Of a DNA stretch of 64,000 bases, positions 3,356 through 21,470 are shown piece by piece. Position 1 is the stretch's first letter. Every line of letters begins with the position of its first letter. The stretch spans positions 1-64,000 of the IMG/VR virus record IMGVR_UViG_3300028045_000001; one strand, given 5' to 3'. The notes under the pieces were generated by a model. It was not told where the DNA came from, did not search any database, and was given only the letters and a program-made list of their open reading frames with translations. Both the position numbers and the translations under genes were made by a program.

Positions 3356-3377
3356 CCCACCTACTACGGAGATACTA

Positions 3378-4774: not shown

Positions 4775-5398
4775 ATGAAACACATCCAGGAATCATTGCC
4801 AGCCCAAGGCAAGCCTAAATTTATTTGTAGGATATGGCGTGATGGGGGAATGGTATTCTATAGGACGTTCGAATATGATGCTCAAAATAAAGAGCAGCAG
4901 AGAATTGTTGCACAAAAAACGGTTAGGGCTTTTTTAACTGACCGCAACGAAGCACATACTCTACTGAAAGGGAGCAACTTTAGAAAGTTTCGCACATCTA
5001 CATCGGCACGTAGTAAGTACGATCAAGTGGGGGTATTTCGAAGTATGGGCTCCAAGCGACGATCCCCTTCTTACTCTGGCCATATCAGTTATGACAAACT
5101 ACATATAGCGATATCGTACTCTGAGAAATTTTTTAGTGAGCCCCTTGCGTACGAACTCGCAGTGAAGACTGCTAAAATGTTAAGAGTATACTTTAGTATA
5201 AAGGACGATAGTGATGAGCATGTAGAAAAATTATGGGAGTATCAATCCTTTAAAGCAGCCCGTAAAAATTTTAGAAAAATGGAAACTAAGCAACAGGCGA
5301 TAGAAGAGATCGTGGACAAATTAGAAGAATTAATAGCCTATTGTGATGAGCGGAGGAGTAACGATGTTAAGAGTAGAGAGAAAAGTACAATTGATTGA
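4775..5398 (+). CDS. hypothetical basic protein, possibly tandem AP2-like DNA-binding domains
   Basis: GV...Y.GHI...ISYS.K....A..LA pattern resembles AP2 domains; the ORF-track start at 4586 runs through the hairpin and promoter, so the start was moved. Confidence 0.35.
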   Translation: MKHIQESLPAQGKPKFICRIWRDGGMVFYRTFEYDAQNKEQQRIVAQKTVRAFLTDRNEAHTLLKGSNFRKFRTSTSARSKYDQVGVFRSMGSKRRSPSYSGHISYDKLHIAISYSEKFFSEPLAYELAVKTAKMLRVYFSIKDDSDEHVEKLWEYQSFKAARKNFRKMETKQQAIEEIVDKLEELIAYCDERRSNDVKSREKSTID

Positions 5399-6922: not shown

Positions 6923-7486
6923 ATGGCGTACTACTATTGTGAAAAGTGTGGCAATTTAATCGAATCGAGAACGGCTATAGTGAATTGTCAAAATACAGAC
7001 TGTTTAAATTCACAATCCTCTGTAGACATGTATCAGATTGATGATTTATTTGTGGAATTAATTACAGGATTACATAGCCGAGGGATCCCAACTACCGGCT
7101 GTTGTTCTGGACACATCCATAATGTTACAGAACTCATTAACCCATATGTTGCTTTTAAAGTTGACAATATACATGAAGACTATGTCAGAGAATTATTTAT
7201 ACCAGAAATGAATAATCTCATCTCGGAAGAATATGTGTTTAGCGTCGTACCACACAATAAGGAAGGGGGCACGTTCATTGTAAAATTAGGAGTAGTTCGT
7301 AGAGATGAGTCATATATTAAAAACAGCTTAACTCTAACTCTTTTAACCCACATAAATAATTTTTATAAATTTCTTCATATGCAACAAGTGACGACTGATT
7401 TAGATCTATTAACTACTACACAGAGTAAACGCGATTATGGAACTTATAATGCGGCCGGAGGCATACATGATCCAATTACACGATGA
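6923..7486 (+). CDS. Zn-binding CCSGH-family protein (paralog 1)
   Basis: YYCEKCG...C...C...YQIDDLFVELITGLHSRGIPTTGCCSGH. Confidence 0.65.
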   Translation: MAYYYCEKCGNLIESRTAIVNCQNTDCLNSQSSVDMYQIDDLFVELITGLHSRGIPTTGCCSGHIHNVTELINPYVAFKVDNIHEDYVRELFIPEMNNLISEEYVFSVVPHNKEGGTFIVKLGVVRRDESYIKNSLTLTLLTHINNFYKFLHMQQVTTDLDLLTTTQSKRDYGTYNAAGGIHDPITR

Positions 7487-8100: not shown

Positions 8101-8253
8101 ATGACAATTCATAATGAACTTCCAGCTAAGCTATTTACAGAAGCATTTATAATGCATACTGAAAACACCTTATCGCAATTTAAAGAGATATTGGATGCTC
8201 TAAGTGAACGAATGGATGTTGTGCAGGCAAGCATGGAAAAACCGATCAGATGA
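8101..8253 (+). CDS. 50-aa paralog of the 7824 ORF, overlapping the start of the DUF285 gene
   Basis: Strong RBS (aggagg); upstream aaaataaaacttagg shared with the 7824 gene; TGA overlaps ATG at 8250. Confidence 0.55.
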
Positions 8254-10379
8254 TCTCGGACCTTTCACATAGAATGGAATTAAATGAGGAGTATATGAAA
8301 AATCAAGAAACAGTAGTGATACCAACTTACGATAGCCAAATTTTATTGCAAACTGACATGGATGCATATAAGTTAGGATGCAAATGGGCAGTGTTAATAA
8401 TCAATAGTAGCTGCGAACTAAAGTTTGAAAACGAGATAAACCGTTCCGAAGCAGACGATCTCATATCCAATACAAAAAATATTATGCTACAAATACAAAC
8501 GACAATAGATAGTTTAGGTATACAAAAAACGATTGTACAAGACAACTCACTAATGGATGAACCAGGTATCATACGCGTAGCTCTCATAGATAAAGAAGAA
8601 GGCATCGTGGACGGAGATATCCCATTATGTATAGCGATATGCTCAGATGAAGATTTAATTGAAGCAGCCGGAATGTGGCTCACTATTGTGTATCGGTTAA
8701 AGATAGGGTGTGAGATTGATTACACTAAATCCGAAAAAGAACGACTCCCACATTTTGAATACCTTGCCACAGTACGACCTGCCAATGCGACAGACAAGGA
8801 AGATTCGACAATGCCAAGTACTTATATTCTCATCGCCCATGCTGTTGCGACTGCCCCTCGGAGTGAAGAGGAACTACGTAAGCATAAAGGTTCGTTTATA
8901 ACAAAGTGGCAAGGACAAAAGATTACCTTACCGTTAGATAAATCCGGAACATATGACTTCGAAATCCATTGGGGCGACGGTGCACACGATAAAGTCATAG
9001 GGTACGATCATAGTAGAATCTCACACACATATGCCGATGGCGAGGAGGTGCATACCATAACCATTTATGGGACTGTAGAAGGATTCGGGTTTGATTATTC
9101 ACCGGGGGCAGGCGTAGCGGATATACTCGATGTACTTCAGTGGGGAGATGTCAAGTTACATAACAACGGAGCTCAGTTTGCACATTGTACAAAGTTAAAG
9201 GGATTCAGTGCTAAGGATGTTCCGGATTTATCTGATGTTACCAATATGTGCGGTATGTTCGGTAAGGCTATTTCTTTCAACCAAGATATATCTAAATGGG
9301 ATGTAAGCAGTGTTACTAATATGGAGCAGATGTTCTGTTACGCCATAGTCTTCAATCAAAACATCTCCAATTGGGATGTGAGTAATGTTACTACTATGGC
9401 TGGCATGTTTAGAGGTGCCGCATCATTCAACCAAGATATATCCAAATGGGATGTAAGCGGTGTTACTAATATGAGGGATATGTTCCATGAGGATACTTCT
9501 TTCAATCAAGCCTTATCTAACTGGGATGTTAGTAGTGTTACCAATATGAACCGCATGTTTTATATGGCTACCTGTTTCAATCAGGAGATCTCTAAGTGGG
9601 ATGTTGGAAATGTTACCGATATGGATGGCATGTTCATGTATGCTGTATCCTTCAACCAAGATATCTCCAACTGGGATGTGAGTAGTGTTACTGGTATGGG
9701 TGCGATGTTCCAGCGAGCTTCATCCTTCGATCAAGACATATCCAAATGGGATGTTAGTAATGTTACCGATATGATGGACATGTTCCGTTGCGCCATAGTC
9801 TTTAACCAAGACATATCCAAATGGGATGTTAGTAGCGTAACTGATATGCAGGATATGTTCCATGCAGCTACATCCTTTAACCAGGATATCTCTAAGTGGG
9901 ATGTAAGCAGCGTAACTGATATGGAGGATATGTTCCATTCAGCTCCATACTTCAATCAGGATGTATCTAACTGGGACGTTAGTAGTGTTACTAATATGAA
10001 CGGCATGTTCCATGAAGCTAAGGCTTTCGATCAAGATATCTCCAAATGGAATGTCGGCAGTGTAACTGATATGCACGGGATGTTCCGAGGGGCTCTTTCC
10101 TTCGATCAAGCTATCTCTAACTGGGATGTGAGTAATGTTACCAACATGAGCGGGATGTTCTATAATGCTGTTCGTTTCGACAAATGTATATATAGCTGGG
10201 ATGTAAGCAAGGTCACTAATATGAGGTGTATGTTCTATGGGGCTACCTGTTTCAACCAGGATATTTCTGAGTGGGACGTGAGTAACGTCACTAATGTACA
10301 AAGCATAGTCGGGCTTGCTCCAAGTTTTAAGCGAAATCTCCCCAATTTTAAAGATTGCGCCAATGTGATAGTTAGATAA
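8250..10379 (+). CDS. BspA/DUF285 leucine-rich-repeat protein with PKD-like domain
   Basis: FITKW...IHWGDG domain followed by 14 full 25-aa repeats of consensus FNQDISxWDVSxVTxMxxMFxxAxS. Confidence 0.9.
9274..10323 (+). repeat. 75-bp coding tandem repeat (DUF285 units)
   Basis: Recurring ttcaa(c/t)caagatat(a/c)tc..a.tgggatgt at 75-nt period; boundaries approximate. Confidence 0.8.
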
Positions 10380-10454: not shown

Positions 10455-10509
10455 ATTTATGAAGCGCTATAAAGTTCATATAAATTTAAATACATTACAG
10501 GAGATTATT

Positions 10510-11067
10510 ATGCAATATGGATATTGTGAAAAATGTGGTCAACTAAGTACAGGCAGGTACCCTTCACGTAAGTGTATGAATGTTGATTGTAAAGGGGAGG
10601 ATGGATACGCCATAGATGAGTTATTCGGGGAATTAATTATCAGGTTACATAGCAATGGTATTGTTACTTCGAATTGTTGTTCCGGACATACTCAACTACG
10701 TGCAAGATCAATAGATACACTTTATATGCAATTTAAAGTATCAGCGGATCGTTTTGATAACACCTTTTTAAAGAGGTGTAATGAAATGGTCCCTAACTTT
10801 CCGGAATGTGACTACAACTTTGAATTATGGTGTAACAAGCAAACCGATGTCACGTACTTCAACCTTGTACTGAAATTAAAATCTAAGGAGGATTCGAAAT
10901 GGCCTACTGAGGCAACTGAACGGCAAATATACCACGTCAGTAATCTTTACAACGTATTATCTGATCCAGGGATGATGCAATTTTTATTTTCATTAACTGA
11001 CGAAGAAGAGAAGCTTAGGTACGCCAGATACAAACTATCAAAGGGCCAAATAGGGGGGCACAAATAA
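10510..11067 (+). CDS. Zn-binding CCSGH-family protein (paralog 2)
   Basis: YCEKCG...CMNVDC...YAIDELFGELIIRLHSNGIVTSNCCSGH; start reassigned to the ATG after RBS ggag. Confidence 0.65.
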   Translation: MQYGYCEKCGQLSTGRYPSRKCMNVDCKGEDGYAIDELFGELIIRLHSNGIVTSNCCSGHTQLRARSIDTLYMQFKVSADRFDNTFLKRCNEMVPNFPECDYNFELWCNKQTDVTYFNLVLKLKSKEDSKWPTEATERQIYHVSNLYNVLSDPGMMQFLFSLTDEEEKLRYARYKLSKGQIGGHK

Positions 11068-11600
11068 TGAGATGCTTTTATTGTAAGTCATGTGGGGTAG
11101 TACATCGTGCGGGGTACCATCCTACTAATTGTAAAAATATGTGTTGCGATGGGACGGTATATGAGATAGATGAGCTGTTTGCAGAATTGATTGTGAAGTT
11201 ACATGGATTGGGCATAGTCACAACCGAATGTTGTTCTGGCCATGCCCATGATGAAAAATCAATTGGGGCGATATATATTTCATTCGCAGTTAAAGGAGCG
11301 AAGACGGAATTCATCAAAAACCACGTTGTAGTCTCACTTAATAAGCAGGCACACGAAGCTTATAAATTTGAGGTCATAGAAAAGGAGGACGAGTATGAGA
11401 GCACCATTAGACTCTGCGTAAAACCAGAATTTAGTGACGTATACATCAATGATTCCCCAACCTGTACAATTTTGAATCACACTAAGTCTTTCATTGCAAT
11501 GTTACTGTATACTCCAAAAATCATAAAGATGCTGTATAGCTTAACTGGAGAGAAAGAAAAACTTAAATACGCTAGATATAGATGTAAGTTACATGCCTAA
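11067..11600 (+). CDS. Zn-binding CCSGH-family protein (paralog 3)
   Basis: FYCKSCG...YEIDELFAELIVKLHGLGIVTTECCSGH; C-terminus LT.E.EKL.YARY shared with paralog 2. Confidence 0.65.
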   Translation: MRCFYCKSCGVVHRAGYHPTNCKNMCCDGTVYEIDELFAELIVKLHGLGIVTTECCSGHAHDEKSIGAIYISFAVKGAKTEFIKNHVVVSLNKQAHEAYKFEVIEKEDEYESTIRLCVKPEFSDVYINDSPTCTILNHTKSFIAMLLYTPKIIKMLYSLTGEKEKLKYARYRCKLHA

Positions 11601-11624: not shown

Positions 11625-11661
11625 TTCCACAGCTTTGATGTCTTCCAATTTTTTTCATCTA

Positions 11662-11669
11662 TATATGAC
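11662..11669 (+). promoter_or_regulatory. early promoter variant TATATGAC
   Basis: One mismatch to consensus, same T-run context, upstream of the first BTLCP gene. Confidence 0.4.
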
Positions 11670-11750
11670 TTATATGAACAACAAAGTTTCTATACCGTAC
11701 TAACGTTATCTAAATCATCTATATTTAATTTTTAAATGGAGGTCATCGAC

Positions 11751-12365
11751 ATGAAGAAGGAGTTACTGTTGGCTACAATTGCAATTGTGTGTATTTCCGG
11801 ATGTGATGTTAACCTTGATATTGGGCCTGATGAAAGCACCAGTGGAGATGTCACAAATCCATATGGCGTGCATTCTCATCGTAACGCGGCTGTTCCCAAA
11901 GCCTGGTCTAAATTCTGTGCCCGCTATAATCAACCAATTGCTTCGAAAGACTATGGAAAAAGGTTTCAGGATCTAAGGGAGATCTTTCACCCGCTATTCG
12001 ATAATTTCGATCATGTTGAAGACATAGATCATTGGGGAGTCGAAGAGCAATGGGATATCATGCCTGACGACGATCTTCGTGGGGATTGTGAGGACTTTGC
12101 ACTTACCCTAAGGGCTCGACTTATTAGAAATGGATTTCCCATGCATGATGTCCGCATTGCTACTTGTCATATATTGAGGAAAGGCAAGCCTATGCATCAC
12201 GCGGTCGCTTTGGTTGAGGTCGATAGAGGTGATGTCTATGTGGTTGATCCAAGTGGAATATATAAATTTAAAGAGTATCGAGTAGTGTCCTGGAATAAGG
12301 TATTGGATGAGAGTGGCATATATTGGGTCATGATAGATAATATCCCAGGTACAATCAAACTTTAG
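11751..12365 (+). CDS. transglutaminase-like cysteine peptidase (BTLCP/LapG-like) lipoprotein, triad intact
   Basis: Lipobox ISGC; WGVEEQW...RGDCEDFALTLR...HHAVALVE...VVD. Confidence 0.85.
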   Translation: MKKELLLATIAIVCISGCDVNLDIGPDESTSGDVTNPYGVHSHRNAAVPKAWSKFCARYNQPIASKDYGKRFQDLREIFHPLFDNFDHVEDIDHWGVEEQWDIMPDDDLRGDCEDFALTLRARLIRNGFPMHDVRIATCHILRKGKPMHHAVALVEVDRGDVYVVDPSGIYKFKEYRVVSWNKVLDESGIYWVMIDNIPGTIKL

Positions 12366-12482: not shown

Positions 12483-13520
12483 ATGGTAGCCAATATTGAA
12501 AAAATTTTAAGCACGATAGTTAGTGAATATAAATCATGGTGTCAAAAAAATAATGTTAAAGATTTTAATAATGAAGATTATAAATATTGTTTTATTGCGG
12601 ATTTTTTTAAACTTAATTCACAAGAACGACGCTTCACTGTTTTAATATCAAAGAAATGCTTAGAAGTATGTGAAGTCATACTCTATGGGGAATCTTTTGA
12701 ATATATGAAAAACGAAGAAAATTCTCTTTGGTTTTATACGGTAATAAATATGACATTCATGGAAAATTTACTTAACTGGGGTACTTCTATTCGTGTAGCA
12801 TGGTTTGAAATTGATGAGAAAGAATATTGTTTTACACATTTCACTCTTAATCTTGATATAGAATCATGGGGAGATTTTATTAAAGCGACTCGTGAATTTA
12901 CAAGAATGAGCTTAACGCCCACAGACTCAGTTGGATCTATAAATACAATTACATATGAAATGGGTTGTAGAATAGCAAAGGATATAATAAAATATTCTAA
13001 AACCAATGATTTATTATTTAAAGTAAAACAAATATTAGTGCGACTGCAGCACATAATGTTTAGCTTTAAAATAAATAAAAGATTTGTATTGACCAGCGAT
13101 AAGAACTTAAAAAATTATAATAATATAAAAATATATTTAATAGATAATACAGAACCACTTAATAGTTGTATATCGCATCTTGATCCAGATGATGTATTTA
13201 CAACGATACCACTTGACCGATTTTATTCGTTTGAAGAAGTAATTGATTCAACTACATTATGTATAAATGTATTGTCTGAAAAAGATTTAATCATTGCGTC
13301 TGGAATATATAGTTTTATTGGAAGCTGCTTATACAACGAATTTAGTATCGATTGTGTTGAAGATAGATGTATAGATGATTCTTATAAAATGCGCTTGCTG
13401 CAAAGCAAAGAAAAAAAGACACTATGTATAGAAAAGGGAGACTATGGCGAAAGGGGTCGTTTATATATAGATGATCTTGTCTATGTCACTATAGAAAATA
13501 TAGACGAAGTTAAATTTTAA
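12483..13520 (+). CDS. hypothetical protein in a visibly lower-GC segment
   Basis: N-terminal half paralogous to the next ORF (YKY.FI.D.F...KKCLEVCE.ILY..FEY.KNEEN.LW). Confidence 0.7.
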   Translation: MVANIEKILSTIVSEYKSWCQKNNVKDFNNEDYKYCFIADFFKLNSQERRFTVLISKKCLEVCEVILYGESFEYMKNEENSLWFYTVINMTFMENLLNWGTSIRVAWFEIDEKEYCFTHFTLNLDIESWGDFIKATREFTRMSLTPTDSVGSINTITYEMGCRIAKDIIKYSKTNDLLFKVKQILVRLQHIMFSFKINKRFVLTSDKNLKNYNNIKIYLIDNTEPLNSCISHLDPDDVFTTIPLDRFYSFEEVIDSTTLCINVLSEKDLIIASGIYSFIGSCLYNEFSIDCVEDRCIDDSYKMRLLQSKEKKTLCIEKGDYGERGRLYIDDLVYVTIENIDEVKF

Positions 13521-13530
13521 TCCAAGGAAA

Positions 13531-14031
13531 ATGCGTATGTCAGATAATATTAAAAAATACCTAGATGTACTAATTAAACAATATGAAGAATGGATTAAAG
13601 GTAGCGACTATTATGAGGCATGGGTTGAAGAAAATAAATATATTGAAAATTTTAATGATGTAGATTATAAATATTATTTCATTTCAGATGTTTTTGAATT
13701 TACTACATATGAAAATTACTACTCTGCATTAATGGCAAAAAAATGTCTGGAGGTATGTGAAACTATACTCTATAAGAATTTTGAATACATCAAAAATGAA
13801 GAAAATGCGCTATGGTATAACATAATAATTAATATGCCAATTTTAAATGATAAACTTAATTTAAATTCATCTATTCATGAAATACGATTTGAGATTGATG
13901 GGGGGACTAAATATGAAAGTTATTGGTTTCCATATAAATTAACTACTGAATCATGGGGAGAATTCATTAAAGCAATCCGCGAGTTTATACAAACGGAATT
14001 TTATAAACATAATGCACATATTGTAGTATAA
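13531..14031 (+). CDS. hypothetical protein, paralog of the 12483 N-terminal domain
   Basis: Shared motifs KKCLEVCE and ESWGEFIKA. Confidence 0.7.
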   Translation: MRMSDNIKKYLDVLIKQYEEWIKGSDYYEAWVEENKYIENFNDVDYKYYFISDVFEFTTYENYYSALMAKKCLEVCETILYKNFEYIKNEENALWYNIIINMPILNDKLNLNSSIHEIRFEIDGGTKYESYWFPYKLTTESWGEFIKAIREFIQTEFYKHNAHIVV

Positions 14032-14077
14032 ATGTCTTTCAATGTTTATTAGTTATATATAACTTGACTGAAAGAAG
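14031..14077 (+). repeat. 47-bp duplicated promoter cassette, copy 1
   Basis: aatgtctttcaatgtttattagttatatataacttgactgaaagaag; copy 2 at 15767-15813 differs by one base; contains TATATAAC at 14056-14063. Confidence 0.85.
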
Positions 14078-14124
14078 GAAAGTATATAACTAATAAACTT
14101 AAATACATTGGAGGACACACTATC

Positions 14125-14739
14125 ATGAAAAAGAATATCTTAAATGCAATAGTTGTAATTTTTGTAGTATTGAATATGGTTGCTTGCGATAGCTCAGCCG
14201 ATGGAGATCAATCTCGATCTGGATCTTATAACAATCAAGTATCCAGGATCAAAGCTTATGATGAGTTCTTAGAGAGAGCAGGTCACGAAGTCCCAACAGC
14301 TCCTGAAAAATCCACTGCTGATCTTCAAAGAGTTTATAATGAACTTAGAGACAACTTCACTTACATGAGCGATAAGGAACAATACAATGTAGAAGATTAT
14401 TGGACCATCATGTCAGATGACAATCTTGTTGGAGATGCCGAAGACTTTGTGTTGACTCTTCGTAAGAAACTGATGGATGATGGGTTTAGACTGGCTAATG
14501 CACGAATAGCGCGATGCTATGTCCCAAGAGAAGACAATAAGTATGACTCTAAATACGTCAGCATCAACCATACTGTGCTTCTTGTAGAAGTCGAAATGGG
14601 TAGAGTGTATGTTGTAGATTCAGATGCCCATTATGATTTTTATAACTTTCCTGTGGTAGAGTGGGCTGACATGCTTGATGAAACTGGTGACTATTGGGTC
14701 AAGTTGGATATCCCTGGAAACAGCGATCGGATGATGTAA
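14125..14739 (+). CDS. BTLCP/LapG-like lipoprotein, catalytic Cys replaced by Ala
   Basis: Lipobox MVAC; GDAEDFVLTLR in place of GDCED; NHTVLLVE...VVD. Confidence 0.8.
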   Translation: MKKNILNAIVVIFVVLNMVACDSSADGDQSRSGSYNNQVSRIKAYDEFLERAGHEVPTAPEKSTADLQRVYNELRDNFTYMSDKEQYNVEDYWTIMSDDNLVGDAEDFVLTLRKKLMDDGFRLANARIARCYVPREDNKYDSKYVSINHTVLLVEVEMGRVYVVDSDAHYDFYNFPVVEWADMLDETGDYWVKLDIPGNSDRMM

Positions 14740-14743
14740 TAAC

Positions 14744-14781
14744 TATACAGGTACTGGGCGATATCGCCCAGTACCTGTATA
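14744..14781 (+). terminator. 38-bp perfect palindrome
   Basis: tatacaggtactgggcgat|atcgcccagtacctgtata. Confidence 0.7.
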
Positions 14782-14841
14782 CAAATAAACATTATTTTTT
14801 TACCATGTACTGATGTGCCGTCTTTCAATAAACCTTGGTTA

Positions 14842-14849
14842 TATATAAC
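14842..14849 (+). promoter_or_regulatory. early promoter variant TATATAAC
   Basis: Same ggttatatataactt context as the 47-bp cassette. Confidence 0.5.
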
Positions 14850-14904
14850 TTATATGAGGAATAAAAAATTATACAATCAATTTAACTACATTGGAGGACG
14901 GACT

Positions 14905-15702
14905 ATGAAAAAGAATATATTAATTGCGATATCTACACTATTCATGATGTTTACTATGGTTGCTTGTGATGGGAGCAGTGGTGGGGGTGGTGCCTCCGGC
15001 GATGACCTATCGGATTCCGGCGAGCTCACCGGAGATCTTGGCACAGACATCATCATAGATCAATATGTTGGGAACACTACTCCGATTATATCCGTTGGTC
15101 AACCAACTGGACGAGTGCGGGCGTATGATGATTTCTTAAGAAGGGATGGGCAGGATGTTCCAGTGGCTCCGAATAAAAATTCGTTTGATCTGAAAAAAGC
15201 GCATAAGGCATTCAGAAAAAAATTCACCTACATGCACGACATAGATAAATACGGTGTAGATGAATATTGGACTATTATGCCTGATGATGATCTTGTTGGG
15301 GATTGCGAAGACTTTGCTCTAACCTTTCGTGAGAAATTAATTGAAGCTGGATTTACTCCACCAAACGTTAGGATAGCAACCTGCGTAATGCCAAATGGAT
15401 ATAGAGATAATAGCCATCAGACTTATCATGCTGTACTCATCGTAGAAGTTTTTTGGGGTGAGGTGTATGTAGTAGATTCCAAGAGATGTTTGAAGTTCGA
15501 TAGCTTTAAAGTAATAGAGTGGGATAAAGTACTTGATGAAACTGGCAACTATTGGGTCAAGATGCGCATACCTAAGGATAAAGGAAATGGCGATCCAGGT
15601 AATGATAATAAAATTGAAGAAGAGGAAACCGAGAAGGAGGACATGGAAGACGACGAACGAAAAGATGGTCCAATAGGCTATTATGATAGACACTATGCAT
15701 AA
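14905..15702 (+). CDS. BTLCP/LapG-like lipoprotein, triad intact, acidic C-terminal tail
   Basis: Lipobox MVAC; YGVDEYW...GDCEDFALTFR...YHAVLIVE...VVD; start at the ATG after ggagg. Confidence 0.85.
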   Translation: MKKNILIAISTLFMMFTMVACDGSSGGGGASGDDLSDSGELTGDLGTDIIIDQYVGNTTPIISVGQPTGRVRAYDDFLRRDGQDVPVAPNKNSFDLKKAHKAFRKKFTYMHDIDKYGVDEYWTIMPDDDLVGDCEDFALTFREKLIEAGFTPPNVRIATCVMPNGYRDNSHQTYHAVLIVEVFWGEVYVVDSKRCLKFDSFKVIEWDKVLDETGNYWVKMRIPKDKGNGDPGNDNKIEEEETEKEDMEDDERKDGPIGYYDRHYA

Positions 15703-15709
15703 TTCAATC

Positions 15710-15749
15710 CTTACATGTTGTTGACCACACTTGGTCAACAACATGTAAG
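15710..15749 (+). terminator. intergenic hairpin
   Basis: 18-bp stem, 4-nt loop, followed by T-run. Confidence 0.75.
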
Positions 15750-15766
15750 AATCATTTATTTTTTTT

Positions 15767-15813
15767 AATGTCTTTCAATGTTTATTGGTTATATATAACT
15801 TGACTGAAAGAAG
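15767..15813 (+). repeat. 47-bp duplicated promoter cassette, copy 2
   Basis: Matches 14031-14077 with one mismatch; TATATAAC at 15792-15799. Confidence 0.85.
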
Positions 15814-15852
15814 TAAAATATAAAACTAATTTAACTATATTGGAGGATGACA

Positions 15853-16470
15853 ATGAAAACAAATTTTATCAATACAATGATAATAATTACTGTAATGTTC
15901 GCTACAGCTGCATGTAAAGAAGATGCATCTATTAGTGATTATATGAATAGCGACGCCACCACAGCAGTTGAATCCATGGGTCGACCAACAAGAAGGGTTA
16001 GGGCTTATGATGACTTCTTAAAAAGAACTGGTAAGAAAGTTAATGCCATTCCAAAAAAGAACTCATTCGATCTTATACGAGTATACGACGAGCTCAGAGA
16101 TAATTTTACTTATATGCGCGACATGGAACAATACGGTGTGGAAGAATACTGGACTGTTATGTCGGACGATGATCCTGTTGGGGATTGTGAAGACTTTGCT
16201 CTAACTCTTCGTGCACGATTGATAGCCGATGGGTTCTCTCCAGTGAATGTCAGGATTGCAACTTGTTACGTACCAACCTCGTATACTAAATCCGATGATC
16301 CAGAAAAGCGACTGAATCATGCAGTTCTTATAGTTGAAATTAATAATGGCCAAGTGTATGTAGTTGATAATGGAGACCACTATAAGTTTCATGAATTTGA
16401 GGTAATTAACTGGGACCGCATGCTTGATGAGACTGGAAATTATTGGGTCAATATGAACGTGTCCAGCTAA
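15853..16470 (+). CDS. BTLCP/LapG-like lipoprotein, triad intact
   Basis: Lipobox TAAC; YGVEEYW...GDCEDFALTLR...NHAVLIVE...VVD. Confidence 0.85.
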   Translation: MKTNFINTMIIITVMFATAACKEDASISDYMNSDATTAVESMGRPTRRVRAYDDFLKRTGKKVNAIPKKNSFDLIRVYDELRDNFTYMRDMEQYGVEEYWTVMSDDDPVGDCEDFALTLRARLIADGFSPVNVRIATCYVPTSYTKSDDPEKRLNHAVLIVEINNGQVYVVDNGDHYKFHEFEVINWDRMLDETGNYWVNMNVSS

Positions 16471-16483
16471 AGATTAGACCTAA

Positions 16484-16512
16484 TGTAGGGTGGGCAATAT
16501 GCCCACCCTGTA
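16484..16512 (+). terminator. intergenic hairpin
   Basis: agggtgggca/tgcccaccct stem followed by T-run. Confidence 0.7.
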
Positions 16513-16554
16513 GTGTATTTTTTTATATTTCTATAAAACTAATTGGAGGATGTT

Positions 16555-17157
16555 ATGAAAGGGATCTTTATAAACGTGACCCTAATTGGCCTACTGCTAC
16601 TTGGACTCGCTTGCGAAGAAACAGAAGTTACCCATTCAAAAATAGGTAAGCATAATAGATGGAGGCATGCCGGGTACGATGACTTTCTTAAGACACGTGG
16701 GCAAAAAATTTTCGATAACCCAAAGAAGTTCCTTGTCGATTTTCGAAAGATATACGACGAGCTTAGAGATAATTTCACGTATATGGGTGACGAAGAACAG
16801 TATGGCAAAGAAGACTATTGGACCATTATGCCTGACGACAATCTGGTTGGGGATGATGAGGATTTTGTGCTAACCCTCAGAGAAAGATTAGTTAGTAGTG
16901 GTTTTAATAAAGCTAACGTAAGGATTGCCAGATGTTATAAACCGAGGGAGGATAATAAATATGATTCGGAGTACCTTATGTTCAATCATGTTGTGGCCCT
17001 TGTTGAAATTGAAATGGGAAGGTTGCTTGTAGCAGATACAGATGACTACTACAACTTCTATCGTTTTCCAGTAGTCAGTTGGTACGACATGCTTGATGAG
17101 ACTGGCGACTATTGGGTCAAGTTGGATATGCCAGGAAATTCGGACAAAATGGAATAA
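16555..17157 (+). CDS. BTLCP/LapG-like lipoprotein, catalytic Cys replaced by Asp
   Basis: Lipobox GLAC; GDDEDFVLTLR; shares REDNKYDS and the PGNSD.M tail with the 14125 ORF. Confidence 0.8.
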   Translation: MKGIFINVTLIGLLLLGLACEETEVTHSKIGKHNRWRHAGYDDFLKTRGQKIFDNPKKFLVDFRKIYDELRDNFTYMGDEEQYGKEDYWTIMPDDNLVGDDEDFVLTLRERLVSSGFNKANVRIARCYKPREDNKYDSEYLMFNHVVALVEIEMGRLLVADTDDYYNFYRFPVVSWYDMLDETGDYWVKLDMPGNSDKME

Positions 17158-17159
17158 CT

Positions 17160-17187
17160 ACAACGCCTGGACATGTCCAGGCGTTGT
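17160..17187 (+). terminator. 28-bp perfect palindrome
   Basis: acaacgcctggaca|tgtccaggcgttgt. Confidence 0.65.
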
Positions 17188-17219
17188 GTAACTTATTTAA
17201 ATACATTGGAGGACATGTC

Positions 17220-17861
17220 ATGAAAAATAAAATTATCAGTATGATGTTAATGGGTGCAATTGTCCTTAATGTAGTTGCATGTGTAGAAGTGACAACTACC
17301 ACAACTACTACAGCTACTGGCGAACCTATTGTAATGGGCGACTACGATATCTCAGGTAATGAAACCCCACTCGAATACATTGATCGACCTTCAAGGAGAG
17401 TTCGATTTTATGATGATTTTTTGAGAAGGACTAATAAGAAAGTTCCCTTAAGTCCTAAAAAGAATGTTGGTGATCTTAAAAAAATATATAAGAAACTTAG
17501 GTCTACTTTTACCTATGTGTCTGACATAAATCAATATGGTGTGGATGATCATTGGGTAGTTATGCCGGACAATAATCGCACAGGGGACTGTGAGGATTTT
17601 GCTTTGACTCTTCGTGAAAAGTTAATTGCAGATGGGTTTGAAAAATCCAACGTGAGATTCGCCACGTGTTACACTCCTAAAAAATATGAGGAAGATGCAA
17701 AGAACAATTACCATGCGGTCCTTATTGTTGAGTTATTTTGGGGAAAAGTGTATGTTGTGGATTATAAGTATTGTGTAGAGTTTCGTAAATTCCCTGTTGA
17801 GAAATGGGATCATGTATTAGATGAGACGGGGAAGTATTGGATCCGGATGGAGATTCGTTAA
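17220..17861 (+). CDS. BTLCP/LapG-like lipoprotein, triad intact
   Basis: Lipobox VVAC, Thr run, YGVDDHW...GDCEDFALTLR...YHAVLIVELFWG..VVD. Confidence 0.85.
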   Translation: MKNKIISMMLMGAIVLNVVACVEVTTTTTTTATGEPIVMGDYDISGNETPLEYIDRPSRRVRFYDDFLRRTNKKVPLSPKKNVGDLKKIYKKLRSTFTYVSDINQYGVDDHWVVMPDNNRTGDCEDFALTLREKLIADGFEKSNVRFATCYTPKKYEEDAKNNYHAVLIVELFWGKVYVVDYKYCVEFRKFPVEKWDHVLDETGKYWIRMEIR

Positions 17862-17906
17862 TTGTTAACGAAATAAATAATAAATTTTAAACGGGGGGTG
17901 TTTAGT

Positions 17907-18962
17907 ATGGCAGAAGAAGCGTATGAAGAAGAGCTGCATTTATTAGCCCTTATGAAAAAACTATTCACGATGGGCGTTGTTTGTTGCAGTGTTGTTTGGG
18001 CAGGATTTAATGTTTGCAGCACTGTCTGGGATTGGGGCAAGGCAAAGTATGAGACACACAAGCAACAATCCCATACTGAGAAACGGTATCTACGACGAAT
18101 GAAATCACTCGTTGCCAGCTACAATGCTCTCGAATCACAAGTTGCCAAAAACGATAGACGATTAACTGAAATTGAAGGAACGATGACCAGTAAATCCGTT
18201 GGACGAACTTCGAACTCATCTAAGGTCAAACTGTGGCCAAGTAATACTATCAGATACCACATTGATGAGAAAATTGAGGATTGGGATTTAACCCAAATGA
18301 TCGATGAGGCATTTGAAAAAATAAGTGAGAATACTTGTTTAAAATTTCATAAGCTTCCGATACTTTGGAAGGATAGGAGTAGCTTTCTGCTAATCACATT
18401 GACGGAGAGTGACGAGGACTATCCTAATGCGACATTGGGCTATTCGCAAAGAAATCAAGTTGAATTGAGTATGTATTCTGAATTTGATACTGTATACCAT
18501 GAGTTTCTACATGCACTTGGATTGCCCCATGAACACCAAAGACCTGATGCTGAAATAGTCGTTAATTTTGATAACCTTGAAGGTGATAGTACTTGGTACA
18601 GAAAATATCCAAAAGATATGTACCCATACCCTTTGGATAAATTCATCTTTGATGCTGACTCCATTATGGCATATTGCTCATATAGCGAGACAACACAACG
18701 AGGGAAGAAAACTATTAATTACGGGAGAGCGCAGGGGTCACTCAGTCCCACTCCAATTGACTACATGAAGATCAATTGTATGTACTGTGGCTCTAATCCT
18801 CCACCGAAAGAGACCCAGTGGTACATGGCACTACTGAACAGGTATTCCCATAAAGGCTCACCAAAGAAGTTGAAGGTGGTCATAGAAGGGGAAGATGGCG
18901 AACGTGATGTACTTGTCACTTTAGATGAAATGGCATCTTTTGGTAATAAAAAAGAATACTGA
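17907..18962 (+). CDS. astacin-family (M12A) zinc metalloprotease with N-terminal hydrophobic segment
   Basis: HEFLHALGLPHEHQRPD signature, Met-turn DSIMAY, WP..TIRY, conserved Cys. Confidence 0.85.
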   Translation: MAEEAYEEELHLLALMKKLFTMGVVCCSVVWAGFNVCSTVWDWGKAKYETHKQQSHTEKRYLRRMKSLVASYNALESQVAKNDRRLTEIEGTMTSKSVGRTSNSSKVKLWPSNTIRYHIDEKIEDWDLTQMIDEAFEKISENTCLKFHKLPILWKDRSSFLLITLTESDEDYPNATLGYSQRNQVELSMYSEFDTVYHEFLHALGLPHEHQRPDAEIVVNFDNLEGDSTWYRKYPKDMYPYPLDKFIFDADSIMAYCSYSETTQRGKKTINYGRAQGSLSPTPIDYMKINCMYCGSNPPPKETQWYMALLNRYSHKGSPKKLKVVIEGEDGERDVLVTLDEMASFGNKKEY

Positions 18963-19085: not shown

Positions 19086-20084
19086 ATGAAAAAAGGTAAA
19101 ACAACAATCAAGGGCAGTAATGCAAAAATGGCTACATTGGCAATTTGTGGGATAGTTAACATCATTTTTATTTGGACTTTTTGTAGTGCAACGGTGACTG
19201 TTGCAGAGGATGTCGCTGTAACGCACGAGGTACAAGAAGAACAAGTTCCATTTTCAATGGAAGAGCATCGTGTACGATGTCGAAAAGCTACCACTTTAGG
19301 TAGAGAGCACCTTCTGTCAAAGCCCCACACTGTGCAAGGATGGCCCGATAAGGTCATTCGATACTATATCGATAAAGACAGATTGACGGATCCATATGTT
19401 GTTGAAGAAGTAATAAATGTATTCGACGCCATAGCAGAAACCACATGTTTAGACTTCATCCGACTTGATGGACCAGAATCATACAATGTGCAGGTTAAGG
19501 TATTATTGGTAACATCCACTACAAATGGGAGGTACCCCACTTCAACATTAGGATACAATGAGATCGCGAATATAATTAGATTGCGCAATGATTCTCAAAT
19601 ATGGACTATCTATCATATGGTTTTACATGCGTTGGGTTTGACTCATGAGAACCAGCGACCCGACGCAGAGCTTCTTGTTGATATGGATAACATACAAGAA
19701 GAGTTTAAATGTAATTTTGAGAAGCTCCCTGCAAGTTGCTTTCTGTACCCAGTAGATAAGTTCATTTTTGAGGTAAGTTCCATTATGTCGTATAGGCCAT
19801 ACTCTGCCTGTAAAGATTGTAGCAAAAGAACTATCGACTACGGGCGCGAGAAGGAGGGACAACGTGAACCGACATCTATTGATTATATGAAATTGGAGTA
19901 CATTTACTGTGGACTTAATCCGCCACCTAAAGAAACCCAATGGTATTTGTCTTTTCTACATAGGTACCATAATCACTCAAAGCCTGAGGATTTGACGGTT
20001 ACAATAAAAAGTAACGGTATAACTTCATACGTTAATTTTGGTGGCATGGCGTCGCCACTCGGCGATCATGTGAAACCGGAGTAA
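19086..20084 (+). CDS. astacin-like protein lacking the catalytic Glu
   Basis: HMVLHALGLTHENQRPD (E to M), SSIMSY; shares YCG.NPPPKETQWY with the upstream paralog; N-terminal TM segment. Confidence 0.8.
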   Translation: MKKGKTTIKGSNAKMATLAICGIVNIIFIWTFCSATVTVAEDVAVTHEVQEEQVPFSMEEHRVRCRKATTLGREHLLSKPHTVQGWPDKVIRYYIDKDRLTDPYVVEEVINVFDAIAETTCLDFIRLDGPESYNVQVKVLLVTSTTNGRYPTSTLGYNEIANIIRLRNDSQIWTIYHMVLHALGLTHENQRPDAELLVDMDNIQEEFKCNFEKLPASCFLYPVDKFIFEVSSIMSYRPYSACKDCSKRTIDYGREKEGQREPTSIDYMKLEYIYCGLNPPPKETQWYLSFLHRYHNHSKPEDLTVTIKSNGITSYVNFGGMASPLGDHVKPE

Positions 20085-20180: not shown

Positions 20181-21470
20181 ATGAAAACAGACACTACCGC
20201 GTTCGTAACAAAGTGGGAAGGGAAACGAGTCACGTTACCATTACACAAAAATGGAACATTTGATTTTGTAGTAGACTGGGGCGACGGTGTAGCAGATCAT
20301 ATAACTGAACATGATCAAAAAGAAATTATACACGATTATGAGGATGGCCAGTTAACGCATGAAGTAGCTATATCTGGCACCATAGAAGGGTTTGGATTTA
20401 TTGTCGATGACCCACTTAGTTACACTGCCATAAATTCGCTCCCCTTTGGATCTTTTCCATTAAATAACACCGACGGCTTTGCGCAGCAGTCCAGGACCAT
20501 TGCATTAGTAAAGAAATTCACGAACTGGTGTATGGGGTTTGTCACATCCAAGCAAGCCATAGTGTCAGGACCAAAGGAAGGAAGCCAATTTATGGACTTT
20601 ATTAAGTCAGCCCAAGCTATGGCCCCAAAACCGAGCGACTGCATATTACTCGATGTCTTACAGTGGGGGGCCGTTAAGTTACACAATGGAGGGTGTCAAT
20701 TTACAGATTGTACAAAGTTAAAAGGCTTCAGTGCTAAGGATGTTCCAGATTTATCTAATGTTACTAATATGATGGGCATGTTCCTCAGAGCTACATCGTT
20801 CAATCAAGACTTATCTAAATGGGATGTGGGTAGTGTTACTGATATGAAAGATATGTTCTGTGGCGCTACTTCCTTTAACCAAAATATCTCTAAATGGGAT
20901 GTGAGTAGTGTTACTGATATGAGCGGTGCGTTCCTCAGGGCTGCATCTTTCAACCAAGACATATCTAATTGGGACGTTAGCAGTGTCACTAATATGAAAG
21001 ATATGTTCTTGGGTGCCGAAGTCTTCGATCAAGACATATCTAACTGGGATGTTGGCAAGGTTACTGATATGGCGAATATGTTTAATGGCGCTACATTATT
21101 CAATCAACCCATCTCTAACTGGAATGTTAACAGCGTCACCGATACAGCTGGGATGTTCTATGAAGCTTCATCCTTTAACCAAGACATATCCAATTGGGAC
21201 GTGGGTAGGGTAACTGACATGAGGTTTATGTTCCACAATGCCACTGCCTTCAATCAAGATATTTCTAAGTGGAATGTTGGCAGTGTTAGGAATATGGATT
21301 GTATGTTCATGTCGGCTGTATCCTTCAACCAAGATATCTCTAACTGGGATGTGAGTAGCGTAACTGCTATGGGAGGTATGTTCTATGAAGCCAGCTCATT
21401 CGATCAGAATATATCCGATTGGGATGTAATCAACACGACCAAAGGAAGTCCCATTAAACAAACAAATTAA
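20181..21470 (+). CDS. BspA/DUF285 leucine-rich-repeat protein
   Basis: FVTKWEG...VDWGDG domain, about 70-aa insertion, 8 full plus 1 partial 25-aa repeats. Confidence 0.9.
   Translation: MKTDTTAFVTKWEGKRVTLPLHKNGTFDFVVDWGDGVADHITEHDQKEIIHDYEDGQLTHEVAISGTIEGFGFIVDDPLSYTAINSLPFGSFPLNNTDGFAQQSRTIALVKKFTNWCMGFVTSKQAIVSGPKEGSQFMDFIKSAQAMAPKPSDCILLDVLQWGAVKLHNGGCQFTDCTKLKGFSAKDVPDLSNVTNMMGMFLRATSFNQDLSKWDVGSVTDMKDMFCGATSFNQNISKWDVSSVTDMSGAFLRAASFNQDISNWDVSSVTNMKDMFLGAEVFDQDISNWDVGKVTDMANMFNGATLFNQPISNWNVNSVTDTAGMFYEASSFNQDISNWDVGRVTDMRFMFHNATAFNQDISKWNVGSVRNMDCMFMSAVSFNQDISNWDVSSVTAMGGMFYEASSFDQNISDWDVINTTKGSPIKQTN

What the first reader, a model, noticed from the sequence alone, without database searches (positions are those of the whole stretch)
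14125..17157. Two catalytically dead BTLCP copies form their own conserved subfamily paired with active partners
Seen: 14125 (GDAED) and 16555 (GDDED) lost the nucleophile by different substitutions. They share features absent from active copies: FVLTLR, the REDNKYDS insert, EMGR, and the C-terminal YWVKLDxPGNSDxM. Each is directly followed by an active copy of the FWG subtype (14905 VFWGEVYVVD; 17220 LFWGKVYVVD), so a dead+active two-gene unit appears duplicated. Inference: the pseudo-protease is maintained as a decoy, for example soaking up host LapD so that active LapG is freed, or acting as a substrate trap or partner subunit.
Basis: partly seen in the sequence, partly recalled or inferred. 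Interest (0 to 1): 0.68.

Follow-up and report, generated by a model that had tools for sequence, protein, structure and literature searches.

The report
Dead protease copies kept by phage
A 240-kb marine jumbo phage carries six copies of a periplasmic cysteine-protease gene (BTLCP family), and two of them have lost only the catalytic cysteine yet are clearly kept by selection, so they probably work as non-cutting binders, though what they bind is unknown.

Summary
The window is the first 64 kb of a 239,960-bp seawater jumbo phage. It holds six BTLCP (Pfam PF06035) paralogs, each with a signal peptide ending in a lipoprotein-type Cys. Two of them (14125-14739, GDAEDF; 16555-17157, GDDEDF) lack the nucleophile. 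They keep the His, the Asp, the acidic residues flanking the Cys, and a confidently predicted LapG-like fold.

The two dead copies are sister genes (support 100/99) and sister to the active copy at 15853-16470. One loss of Cys before a duplication is therefore more economical than two independent losses.

They are under purifying selection. Third codon positions are near saturation (p 0.60) while second positions differ at 0.245, and both frames are open.

At columns invariant in the four active copies, both dead copies changed only at the Cys and at four other sites, three of them next to catalytic elements.

Limits:
- The "subfamily" has two members, both in this genome.
- The "duplicated dead+active unit" is compatible with the tree but unresolved (57/38).
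- These proteins are not LapG equivalogs, and the host is unknown, so the LapD-decoy idea has no support.

The adjacent astacin pair shows the same pattern: one copy has HExxH, the other HMxxH.

The parts
11751..12365 (+). BTLCP paralog with intact GDCEDF/His/Asp and a lipoprotein-type signal (ISGC). It belongs to a separate, older lineage that groups with single-copy phage-like lipoprotein BTLCPs from other metagenomes.
   Evidence: PF06035 71.2 bits. Tree: groups with P0006-P0012 at 93/96 and 99/98*. Lipobox. Start as in database protein P0005.
14030..14124 (+). Promoter-like bipartite element GTCTTTCAAT-N10-GTTATATATAACTT plus a leader with ATTGGAGGA ribosome-binding site, in front of dead copy 1.
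   Evidence: Alignment of the six upstream regions. Element also before 11751, 14905, 15853 and at three other places in the genome. Promoter function is inferred.
14125..14739 (+). Dead BTLCP copy 1. GDAEDF (Cys to Ala); His149, Asp165 and the acidic residues D104/E106/D107 kept; signal peptide ending NMVAC|D.
   Evidence: AlphaFold2 model mean pLDDT 87.6, core 96-98. Best Foldseek matches are LapG structures 4u65_E, 4fgp, 4fgo, 4fgq at probability 1.00.
14905..15702 (+). Active-looking BTLCP of the 'FWG' type. GDCEDF, lipoprotein signal (TMVAC|D), long Gly/Ser-rich linker, acidic C-terminal tail.
   Evidence: PF06035 53.7 bits. Alignment. Lipobox pattern.
15710..15749 (+). Terminator-like hairpin (18 pairs) after 14905-15702.
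15853..16470 (+). Active-looking BTLCP (GDCEDF). It is the closest relative of the dead clade and has a loop of the same length as the dead copies' PREDNKYDS loop.
   Evidence: PF06035 58.2 bits. Sister to the dead pair at 91/90 and 87/84. Start as in database protein P0003.
16484..16512 (+). Terminator-like hairpin directly before dead copy 2. The promoter-like element is absent here.
16555..17157 (+). Dead BTLCP copy 2. GDDEDF (Cys to Asp); His and Asp kept; signal peptide ending GLAC|E. It is the faster-evolving of the two (tip branch 0.74 against 0.15) and has no promoter-like element of its own.
   Evidence: PF06035 40.4 bits.
17159..17188 (+). Terminator-like hairpin between dead copy 2 and the second FWG copy.
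17220..17861 (+). Second active-looking BTLCP of the 'FWG' type. GDCEDF, lipobox VVAC, Thr-rich linker.
   Evidence: PF06035 52.1 bits..
17898..18962 (+). Astacin-like zinc metalloprotease with an intact HEFLHALGLPHE motif and an N-terminal hydrophobic segment.
   Evidence: PF01400 66.7 bits..
19086..20084 (+). Astacin-like paralog with HMVLHALGLTHE. The catalytic Glu is replaced by Met, and the three zinc-binding His and the SIMxY Met-turn are kept. This is a second probable dead protease next to an active partner.
   Evidence: PF01400 68 bits. 43% identical to 17898-18962 over 242 residues. These are the only two astacin genes in the genome.

Best explanation
The two genes are pseudoenzymes kept by selection. 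They are exported BTLCP-fold proteins with lipoprotein-type signals, encoded by a marine jumbo phage. They arose inside the phage's own tandem expansion of BTLCP genes.

An active ancestor, sister to the copy at 15853-16470, lost the nucleophilic Cys once. The catalytic centre was then remodelled at a few neighbouring positions (Cys+4 Ala to Val, His+1 Ala to Thr/Val, beta-1 Thr to Arg). The gene later duplicated, perhaps together with its FWG-type neighbour.

Because fold, export signal, the acidic residues flanking the Cys, His and Asp are all kept, the most likely mode of action is binding without cutting in the infected cell's envelope. The dead copies would hold, mask or compete for the same kind of envelope target or regulator that the four active paralogs cleave.

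Shown: loss of Cys, single clade, purifying selection, retained fold. Inferred: export, lack of activity (by analogy with Cys mutants of HvyA), and the binding role. The target is unknown.
For: Genome and family:
- The record is a 239,960-bp virus with terminal repeats and phiKZ-like genes.
- It has six PF06035 genes.

Descent:
- The dead pair is a clade at 100/99, sister to 15853-16470 at 87-91.

Selection:
- dN is 0.33 with saturated dS.
- Codon-position p-distances are 0.34/0.245/0.60.
- Neutral simulations keep an open frame in about 1% of replicates at 0.2 substitutions per site per lineage and fewer at higher rates. The third-position distance implies about 0.6.

Retained architecture:
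- 10 of the 11 residues that are invariant or nearly invariant (90% or more) across 102 family members are kept. Only the Cys is gone.
- The dead copies keep 47 and 43 of the 54 columns invariant in the four active copies. The only columns changed in both are C105, A109, I117, T130 and A150.
- AlphaFold2 mean pLDDT is 87.6, with LapG as best structural match.

Export and expression:
- All six have signal peptides with a Cys at residue 18-21.
- Dead copy 1 has the same promoter-like element and ribosome-binding site as the active copies.

Activity: Cys to Ser/Ala abolishes function in the BTLCP HvyA (PMC4241560).

Reality of the sequence: it is identical in independent seawater metagenomes.

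Parallel case: the adjacent astacin pair has one HExxH and one HMxxH copy.
Against: - No binding partner or substrate is known, and the host is unknown.
- There are no expression data. No RNA run holds the region.
- The clade has only two members in one genome, so selection was measured between paralogs, not across genomes.
- Dead copy 2 evolves faster (tip 0.74 against 0.15), has VYVVD changed to LLVAD next to the Asp, and lacks its own promoter-like element. It could be under weaker constraint.
- Dead copy 1's lipobox (NMVAC) misses both patterns tried by one residue.
- A second Cys (RIARC) conserved in all six copies was not excluded as a substitute nucleophile.
- Lack of activity is inferred, not measured.
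Confidence: 0.55

Rival explanations
1. LapD decoy. The dead copies bind the host's LapD periplasmic domain, displace host LapG, and so trigger release of a LapA-type adhesin and detachment of the infected cell.
For: The fold is LapG-like, with best Foldseek hits to LapG structures including 4u65, the LapG-LapD complex. The proteins are exported. A Cys-less LapG-like protein would be a plausible competitor in principle (inference). Lap systems occur in marine Gammaproteobacteria, and LapD_MoxY_N was found in the Marinobacter and Marinomonas genomes checked.
Against: - On NCBIfam's LapG equivalog model the six copies score at most 21.8 bits against a cut-off of 320, and both dead copies give no hit.
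- Identity to LapG structures is 16-19%.
- The three genomes with the closest bacterial relatives have no LapD_MoxY_N.
- The LapD-facing surface of LapG is poorly conserved even among true orthologs (PMC4359373), so it cannot be recognised from sequence.
- The host is unknown.
Confidence: 0.1
2. Regulatory or partner subunit. Each dead copy forms a complex with an active paralog (its FWG neighbour or the sister copy) and activates, inhibits or targets it, as dead LytM-domain factors do for cell-wall amidases.
For: Each dead gene lies directly before an FWG-type active gene. The FWG pair has 14 shared private residues, the second highest of all pairings. Dead-plus-active pairing recurs in the neighbouring astacin genes. 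Precedents for pseudoenzyme partners rest on general knowledge.
Against: The genes are separate cassettes with hairpin terminators between them, and three of five have their own promoter-like element, so they do not form a coupled operon. LapG is not known to act as a dimer (general knowledge). The FWG clade is unresolved at 57/38, so co-duplication is not shown.
Confidence: 0.15
3. Decaying relics. The two genes are pseudogenes in the making after loss of the catalytic Cys.
For: Dead copy 2 has a long tip branch (0.74), lower Pfam score (40.4 bits, match ending at profile position 109), altered VYVVD motif and no promoter-like element of its own.
Against: - Both frames are open although third positions are near saturation. 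Neutral simulation gives 0.06-1% open frames at 0.2-0.5 substitutions per site.
- Second-position divergence is 0.245 against 0.60 at third positions.
- The dead pair has the lowest dN (0.33) of all 15 pairings.
- 80-87% of active-invariant columns are kept.
- The model is confident.
Confidence: 0.05
4. Still enzymes. The copies retain some catalytic activity with other chemistry, for example the conserved second Cys (RIARC) or water activated by His/Asp.
For: His, Asp and the acidic residues flanking the Cys are strictly kept. One Cys remains in the mature protein of each dead copy and is invariant in all six paralogs.
Against: The two copies carry different residues (Ala, Asp) at the nucleophile position, which does not fit a new shared catalytic residue there. 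Cys to Ala/Ser abolishes HvyA function (PMC4241560). The second Cys is also present in the active copies, so it is not a replacement specific to the dead ones.
Confidence: 0.07

Closest known systems
LapG (calcium-dependent periplasmic cysteine protease of the Lap biofilm system; PDB 4fgo/4fgp/4fgq, 4u65)
   Same: Same Pfam family (PF06035) and same fold, as the best structural match. Same D-C-E-D context around the nucleophile. Exported to the envelope.
   Different: Only 16-19% identical. Fails the LapG equivalog model (at most 21.8 bits against 320). Lipoprotein-type signal instead of a soluble periplasmic protein. Phage-encoded and in six copies. Two copies lack the Cys. No LapD in the phage (that search rang in none of its control genomes).
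HvyA of Caulobacter (BTLCP that prevents capsulation; PMC4241560)
   Same: BTLCP-family periplasmic protein whose function needs the Cys/His/Asp triad and bears on phage susceptibility. The closest bacterial relatives of the phage copies are alphaproteobacterial BTLCPs in genomes without LapD.
   Different: HvyA is a soluble, host-encoded, single-copy protein in a capsule locus. Direct similarity to HvyA was not measured here.
BTLCP as a frequent phage auxiliary gene (river-water single-virus genomes; PMC11283719)
   Same: Phage-encoded BTLCPs are common and move between viral clusters. Single-copy lipoprotein BTLCPs on phage-like contigs are the nearest foreign relatives. Atlas clusters of viral transglutaminase-like lipoproteins exist.
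   Different: Those are single copies. None of 90 other BTLCP loci fetched here has a second copy in its flanks. No nucleophile-only loss under selection has been described in the papers searched.
Other Cys-less BTLCP homologs (P0011 on a phage-like contig; P0068 = L073 in a Sulfurovum MAG; P0107)
   Same: They lack the nucleophile (Thr, His, Asn). They are about 2% of the 146 foreign representatives examined.
   Different: They are not related to the window's dead clade. They have also lost other triad residues: P0011 and P0107 lost both His and Asp, and P0068/L073 changed the Asp to Asn while keeping the His. The window's copies lost the Cys alone.
Pseudoenzyme paralogs in tandem effector arrays or as regulators (for example ROP5/ROP18 of Toxoplasma; dead LytM factors EnvC/NlpD) - general knowledge
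   Same: Catalytically dead paralogs kept by selection beside active ones, acting by binding.
   Different: Unrelated folds and organisms. No interaction has been shown here.

Membership tests
BTLCP / Peptidase_C93 (Pfam PF06035) | Match to the family profile above the curated cut-off (27 bits) | tested here: met
   All six copies pass. The dead copies score 45.9 and 40.4 bits.
BTLCP / Peptidase_C93 (Pfam PF06035) | Cys-His-Asp catalytic triad | tested here: not met
   Cys is replaced by Ala (14125) and Asp (16555), while His and Asp are kept. The four other copies have the full triad. The dead copies are therefore family members by descent and fold, not by catalytic equipment.
BTLCP / Peptidase_C93 (Pfam PF06035) | N-terminal export signal | tested here: met
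   All six have a hydrophobic N-terminus with a Cys at residue 18-21. Five fit one of the two lipobox patterns tried, which were written from memory. Dead copy 1 (NMVAC) misses both by one residue. No dedicated signal-peptide predictor was available.
BTLCP / Peptidase_C93 (Pfam PF06035) | LapG-type transglutaminase-like fold | tested here: met
   Model of dead copy 1 has pLDDT 87.6. The top six Foldseek PDB hits are LapG chains, probability 1.00, TM 0.44-0.54.
LapG proper (NCBIfam NF045674, equivalog) | Score at or above the equivalog cut-off (320 bits) | tested here: not met
   Best score is 21.8 bits. Both dead copies and 17220 give no hit.
LapG proper (NCBIfam NF045674, equivalog) | Works with a LapD receptor and a LapA-type adhesin in the same cell | not testable with these tools
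   The host is unknown. The phage itself has no LapD_MoxY_N, though that search rang in none of its control genomes. The closest bacterial relatives lie in genomes without it.
Pseudoenzyme (maintained inactive paralog) | Lacks a residue essential for catalysis in characterised relatives | tested here: met
   Nucleophile absent. Cys to Ser/Ala is non-functional in HvyA (PMC4241560). Activity itself was not measured.
Pseudoenzyme (maintained inactive paralog) | Kept by purifying selection | tested here: met
   dN 0.33 with saturated dS. Position-2 p-distance 0.245 against 0.60 at position 3. Open frames are unlikely under neutrality. 80-87% of active-invariant columns are kept.
Pseudoenzyme (maintained inactive paralog) | Conserved across genomes | tested here: not met
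   No member of the dead clade was found outside this genome. No related phage was found in IMG/VR, only an identical fragment.
Astacin (Pfam PF01400), neighbouring pair | HExxHxxGxxH zinc motif with catalytic Glu | tested here: inconclusive
   17898-18962 has HEFLHALGLPHE, so the feature is met. 19086-20084 has HMVLHALGLTHE, so the Glu is not met. Both pass the Pfam cut-off.

The most novel reading that the evidence does not exclude
The phage deploys matched sets of active and deliberately inactivated envelope proteases from two unrelated families (four active plus two dead BTLCPs; one active plus one dead astacin). Together they form an enzyme-plus-binder toolkit that remodels or hijacks the host cell surface during infection. 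The dead members act as specific, non-cutting binders of host envelope proteins. This would be a phage counterpart of the pseudoenzyme/enzyme effector arrays of eukaryotic parasites.
Probability: 0.2. Interest if true: 0.75.

Novelty: new variant of a known kind. Interest (0 to 1): 0.5.

Why it matters
BTLCP genes are among the most common auxiliary genes in environmental phages, yet nobody knows what they do for a phage. This phage offers a natural experiment in one genome: four active-looking copies and two copies in which only the nucleophile was removed and the active-site surroundings retuned, all kept by selection.

If the dead copies bind the target of the active ones, they are ready-made substrate traps. 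They could be used to fish out the host envelope target of phage BTLCPs. The same pattern in the adjacent astacin pair suggests a general strategy rather than an accident.

The practical limits are an uncultured phage, an unknown host and no relatives.

Tried and rejected
- **Complex prediction.** Dead copy 1 (residues 36-204) was tested with its FWG neighbour (residues 68-240). The result was no verdict, score 0.00. This is not evidence for or against binding.
- **Close relatives of the dead copy.** None were found in viral contigs, cultured phages or the word search. A cross-genome dN/dS test was therefore impossible.
- **Related phage genomes.** A search with the DNA polymerase gave only an identical 7-kb fragment in IMG/VR. 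Cultured phiKZ-like phages are about 24-25% identical.
- **Population variation.** Contigs of four seawater runs show zero substitutions across 14000-17900, so no pN/pS was possible. These are contigs only, with no RNA runs, so nothing can be said about expression.
- **Host inference from the BTLCP genes.** The best bacterial match is 33% identical, in a Proteobacteria MAG. This is too distant to name a host.
- **Pairwise dS.** It was saturated or not computable for most pairs, so exact dN/dS values are unreliable and only the inequality is used.
- **Literature.** Searches for LapG plus pseudoenzyme and for BTLCP plus jumbo phage found nothing.
- **LapD in the phage.** The search found none, and it rang in none of its control genomes either.
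- **Sigma-70-type promoter scan.** It found no more sites than shuffled sequence. The phage-specific element was found by alignment instead.
Full report
**What the window is.** The window is the first 64 kb of a 239,960-bp virus record with direct terminal repeats. It encodes an SNF2-type helicase, a weak phiKZ internal-head-protein match, a divergent family B DNA polymerase and a chaperonin-like protein. The polymerase is about 24-25% identical to those of phiKZ-like jumbo phages of Xanthomonas, Burkholderia and Pseudomonas. Near-identical DNA occurs in seawater metagenome runs from several studies. This is therefore an uncultured marine jumbo phage with an unknown host. IMG/VR held no related genome, only an identical 7-kb fragment.

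**The observation.** The genome has six PF06035 (BTLCP, Peptidase_C93) genes, all in the window and all on the + strand:
- 11751-12365
- 14125-14739
- 14905-15702
- 15853-16470
- 16555-17157
- 17220-17861

Four read GDCEDF at the nucleophile. 14125 reads GDAEDF (codon GCC) and 16555 reads GDDEDF (codon GAT). The His and Asp of the triad are invariant in all six. One detail needs correcting: the PREDNKYDS loop is not an insertion private to the dead copies, because the active copy at 15853 has a loop of equal length. Contigs from independent runs cover both odd codons without a single difference, so these are not assembly errors.

**Are the dead copies a group of their own?** Within this genome, yes.
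- They are 58-61% identical, the closest of all 15 pairings (lowest dN, 0.33).
- They share 21 residues found in no other copy, against 14 for the next pairing.
- They form a clade with 100/99 support in two trees.
- That clade is sister to the active copy 15853-16470 (91/90 and 87/84). The dead lineage therefore arose inside the phage's own tandem expansion.

The economical reading is one loss of Cys before a duplication, not two independent losses. Both replacement codons start with G, so a Gly intermediate needs three changes against four (inference).

Outside this genome I found no member of the clade:
- The word search returned only the two dead copies themselves.
- The profile search of 1.84 billion representatives gave 1,492 hits, and the nearest foreign ones have E-values of 1e-39 to 1e-19.
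- Those nearest hits are lipoprotein-type BTLCPs with an intact Cys, lying as single copies on phage-like contigs.
- Of 146 foreign representatives, three lack the Cys. They are unrelated to the window's clade and have also lost other triad residues: P0011 and P0107 lost both His and Asp, and P0068/L073 changed the Asp to Asn.

"Conserved subfamily" is thus too strong. It is a two-member, genome-specific clade.

**Was a dead+active unit duplicated?** The gene order is dead, FWG, active sister, dead, FWG. The two FWG copies are a clade in the best tree, but only at 57/38, and they were unresolved in the larger tree. Their 14 private shared residues speak for kinship. The idea is compatible with the data but not shown. 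If it is true, the dead pair (path length 0.90) has diverged no more than the active FWG pair (1.20) since the duplication.

**Selection.**
- Synonymous sites are saturated in all pairs, while dN for the dead pair is 0.33.
- Codon-position p-distances for the dead pair are 0.34, 0.245 and 0.60.
- The third-position value corresponds to roughly 0.6 substitutions per site per lineage.
- In neutral simulations only about 1% of replicates keep an open frame at 0.2 substitutions per site, and 0.06% at 0.5.
- All 11 residues that are invariant or nearly invariant (90% or more) in a 102-sequence family alignment are kept, except the Cys.
- Of 54 columns invariant in the four active copies, dead copy 1 keeps 47 and dead copy 2 keeps 43. 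The columns changed in both are C105, A109 (to Val), I117, T130 (to Arg) and A150 (to Thr/Val). Apart from I117, these are the nucleophile itself, one helical turn after it, the residue before the conserved beta-1 Cys, and the residue after the catalytic His.

This pattern indicates a targeted retuning of the catalytic centre on an otherwise conserved scaffold, not decay. One caveat applies: copy 2 evolves faster (tip 0.74 against 0.15), has LLVAD for VYVVD, and lacks the promoter-like element.

**Structure and family.** The AlphaFold2 model of dead copy 1 is confident (mean pLDDT 87.6, core 96-98). Its best PDB matches are LapG structures. The proteins are nevertheless not LapG equivalogs. 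They score at most 21.8 bits against a cut-off of 320, and the dead copies give no hit at all. The closest bacterial relatives are alphaproteobacterial and unclassified proteobacterial BTLCPs at 30-33% identity. The three such genomes I checked have no LapD_MoxY_N domain, whereas a Marinobacter and a Marinomonas genome with LapG-type genes do. The LapD-binding face of LapG is poorly conserved even among orthologs (PMC4359373), so it cannot be recognised by sequence. The LapD-decoy idea is thus unsupported, though not excluded.

**Gene organisation.** All six proteins begin with a signal peptide that carries a Cys at residue 18-21. Five fit a lipobox pattern, and dead copy 1 misses by one residue. 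Terminator-like hairpins follow the genes ending at 15702, 16470 and 17157, and a similar hairpin after 14739 is visible by eye in the sequence printed. Four of the six genes, including dead copy 1, are preceded by a bipartite element, GTCTTTCAAT-N10-GTTATATATAACTT. It also occurs at three other places in the genome, each upstream of a + strand gene. Five share the ATTGGAGGA ribosome-binding site, which accounts for five of its eight occurrences in the genome. The genes therefore look like separate, similarly controlled cassettes rather than a coupled operon. Promoter function is inferred.

**Context.**
- BTLCP was the most frequently identified auxiliary gene in a river-water single-virus survey, and its tree indicated exchange between viral clusters (PMC11283719).
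- BTLCPs have two characterised roles: LapG, which releases an adhesin, and HvyA, which blocks capsulation and so affects phage sensitivity. In HvyA, Cys to Ser/Ala is non-functional (PMC4241560).
- A tandem array is unusual. None of 90 other BTLCP loci fetched here, each with 5-10 kb of flank where available, has a second copy.
- The array sits in a region rich in paralog families.
- Directly after it lie the genome's only two astacin-like genes. They are 43% identical. One has HEFLHALGLPHE and the other HMVLHALGLTHE, so the catalytic Glu is replaced by Met while the zinc ligands are kept. Two unrelated protease families therefore show an active-plus-dead pairing side by side.

**Mechanism.** The best-supported reading is that the dead copies are exported, folded, non-catalytic binders derived from an active paralog and kept by selection. 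I think they most likely bind, without cutting, the same class of envelope target or regulator as the active copies, as a trap, mask or competitor.

The rivals are:
- a LapD decoy (about 0.1);
- a partner or regulator of an active paralog (about 0.15). The one complex prediction gave no verdict and counts neither way;
- residual or altered catalysis (about 0.07);
- decay (about 0.05).

Activity, export, expression and targets are all untested.

**Verdict.** This is a new variant of a known kind. Phage BTLCPs and pseudoenzymes are both known, but nucleophile-only loss under selection in a phage BTLCP array was not found in the literature searched. Interest is moderate, because it is limited by an orphan genome and an unknown host.

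Noticed in passing
window 17898-18962 and 19086-20084: The genome's only two astacin-like metalloprotease genes lie directly after the BTLCP array. One has the intact HExxHxxGxxH motif. The other has HMxxHxxGxxH, with the catalytic Glu replaced by Met and the zinc ligands and Met-turn kept. This is a second active-plus-dead protease pair.
   Followed up: partly
window 11655-11690, 14030-14065, 14815-14852, 15765-15802; genome 123400, 147375, 148650: A bipartite element, GTCTTTCAAT-N10-GTTATATATAACT, recurs about 55-65 nt upstream of + strand genes. It looks like a phage-specific promoter class and is unlike the sigma-70 consensus. It is absent before 16555 and 17220.
   Followed up: partly
window 8250-10379 and 20181-21470 (also 62864-63955; genome 149128-151377, 152697-153848): A five-member family of proteins made of NxSxWDVSxVTxM-type repeats brackets the protease region. 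They look like DUF285/BspA-type repeats, but this was judged by eye and not scanned against Pfam.
   Followed up: no
window 10459-11067, 11067-11600 (and 6923-7486); 12483-13520 and 13531-14031: Further small paralog families without Pfam matches lie between the first BTLCP gene and the array. One of them has a Cys-rich CCSGH motif. The whole 7-23 kb stretch is a zone of gene-family expansion.
   Followed up: no
window 15631 (acidic tail of 14905-15702): One low-depth contig from another seawater run lacks 6 bases here. This is the only difference seen in 3.9 kb across four runs, so the phage population looks almost clonal across studies.
   Followed up: no
L073 (Sulfurovum sp. MAG) 4788-5381; same protein as P0068/L089: A bacterial BTLCP homolog has His in place of the nucleophilic Cys (GDHEDK) and Asn for the Asp. 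It is unrelated to the window's dead clade, so Cys-less BTLCPs arise repeatedly.
   Followed up: no
window 14125-14190 versus 14905-14970: The signal peptides of dead copy 1 and its FWG neighbour are unusually alike (MKKNIL...MVACD in both), although the mature parts belong to different clades. This may reflect local gene conversion or recombination at the 5' ends.
   Followed up: no
genome 208208-225308 and 235891-238694: The largest paralog family in the genome has 12 members. A nine-member family includes the phiKZ internal-head-protein-like genes at 2336-4550. Paralog expansion is a general habit of this phage.
   Followed up: no
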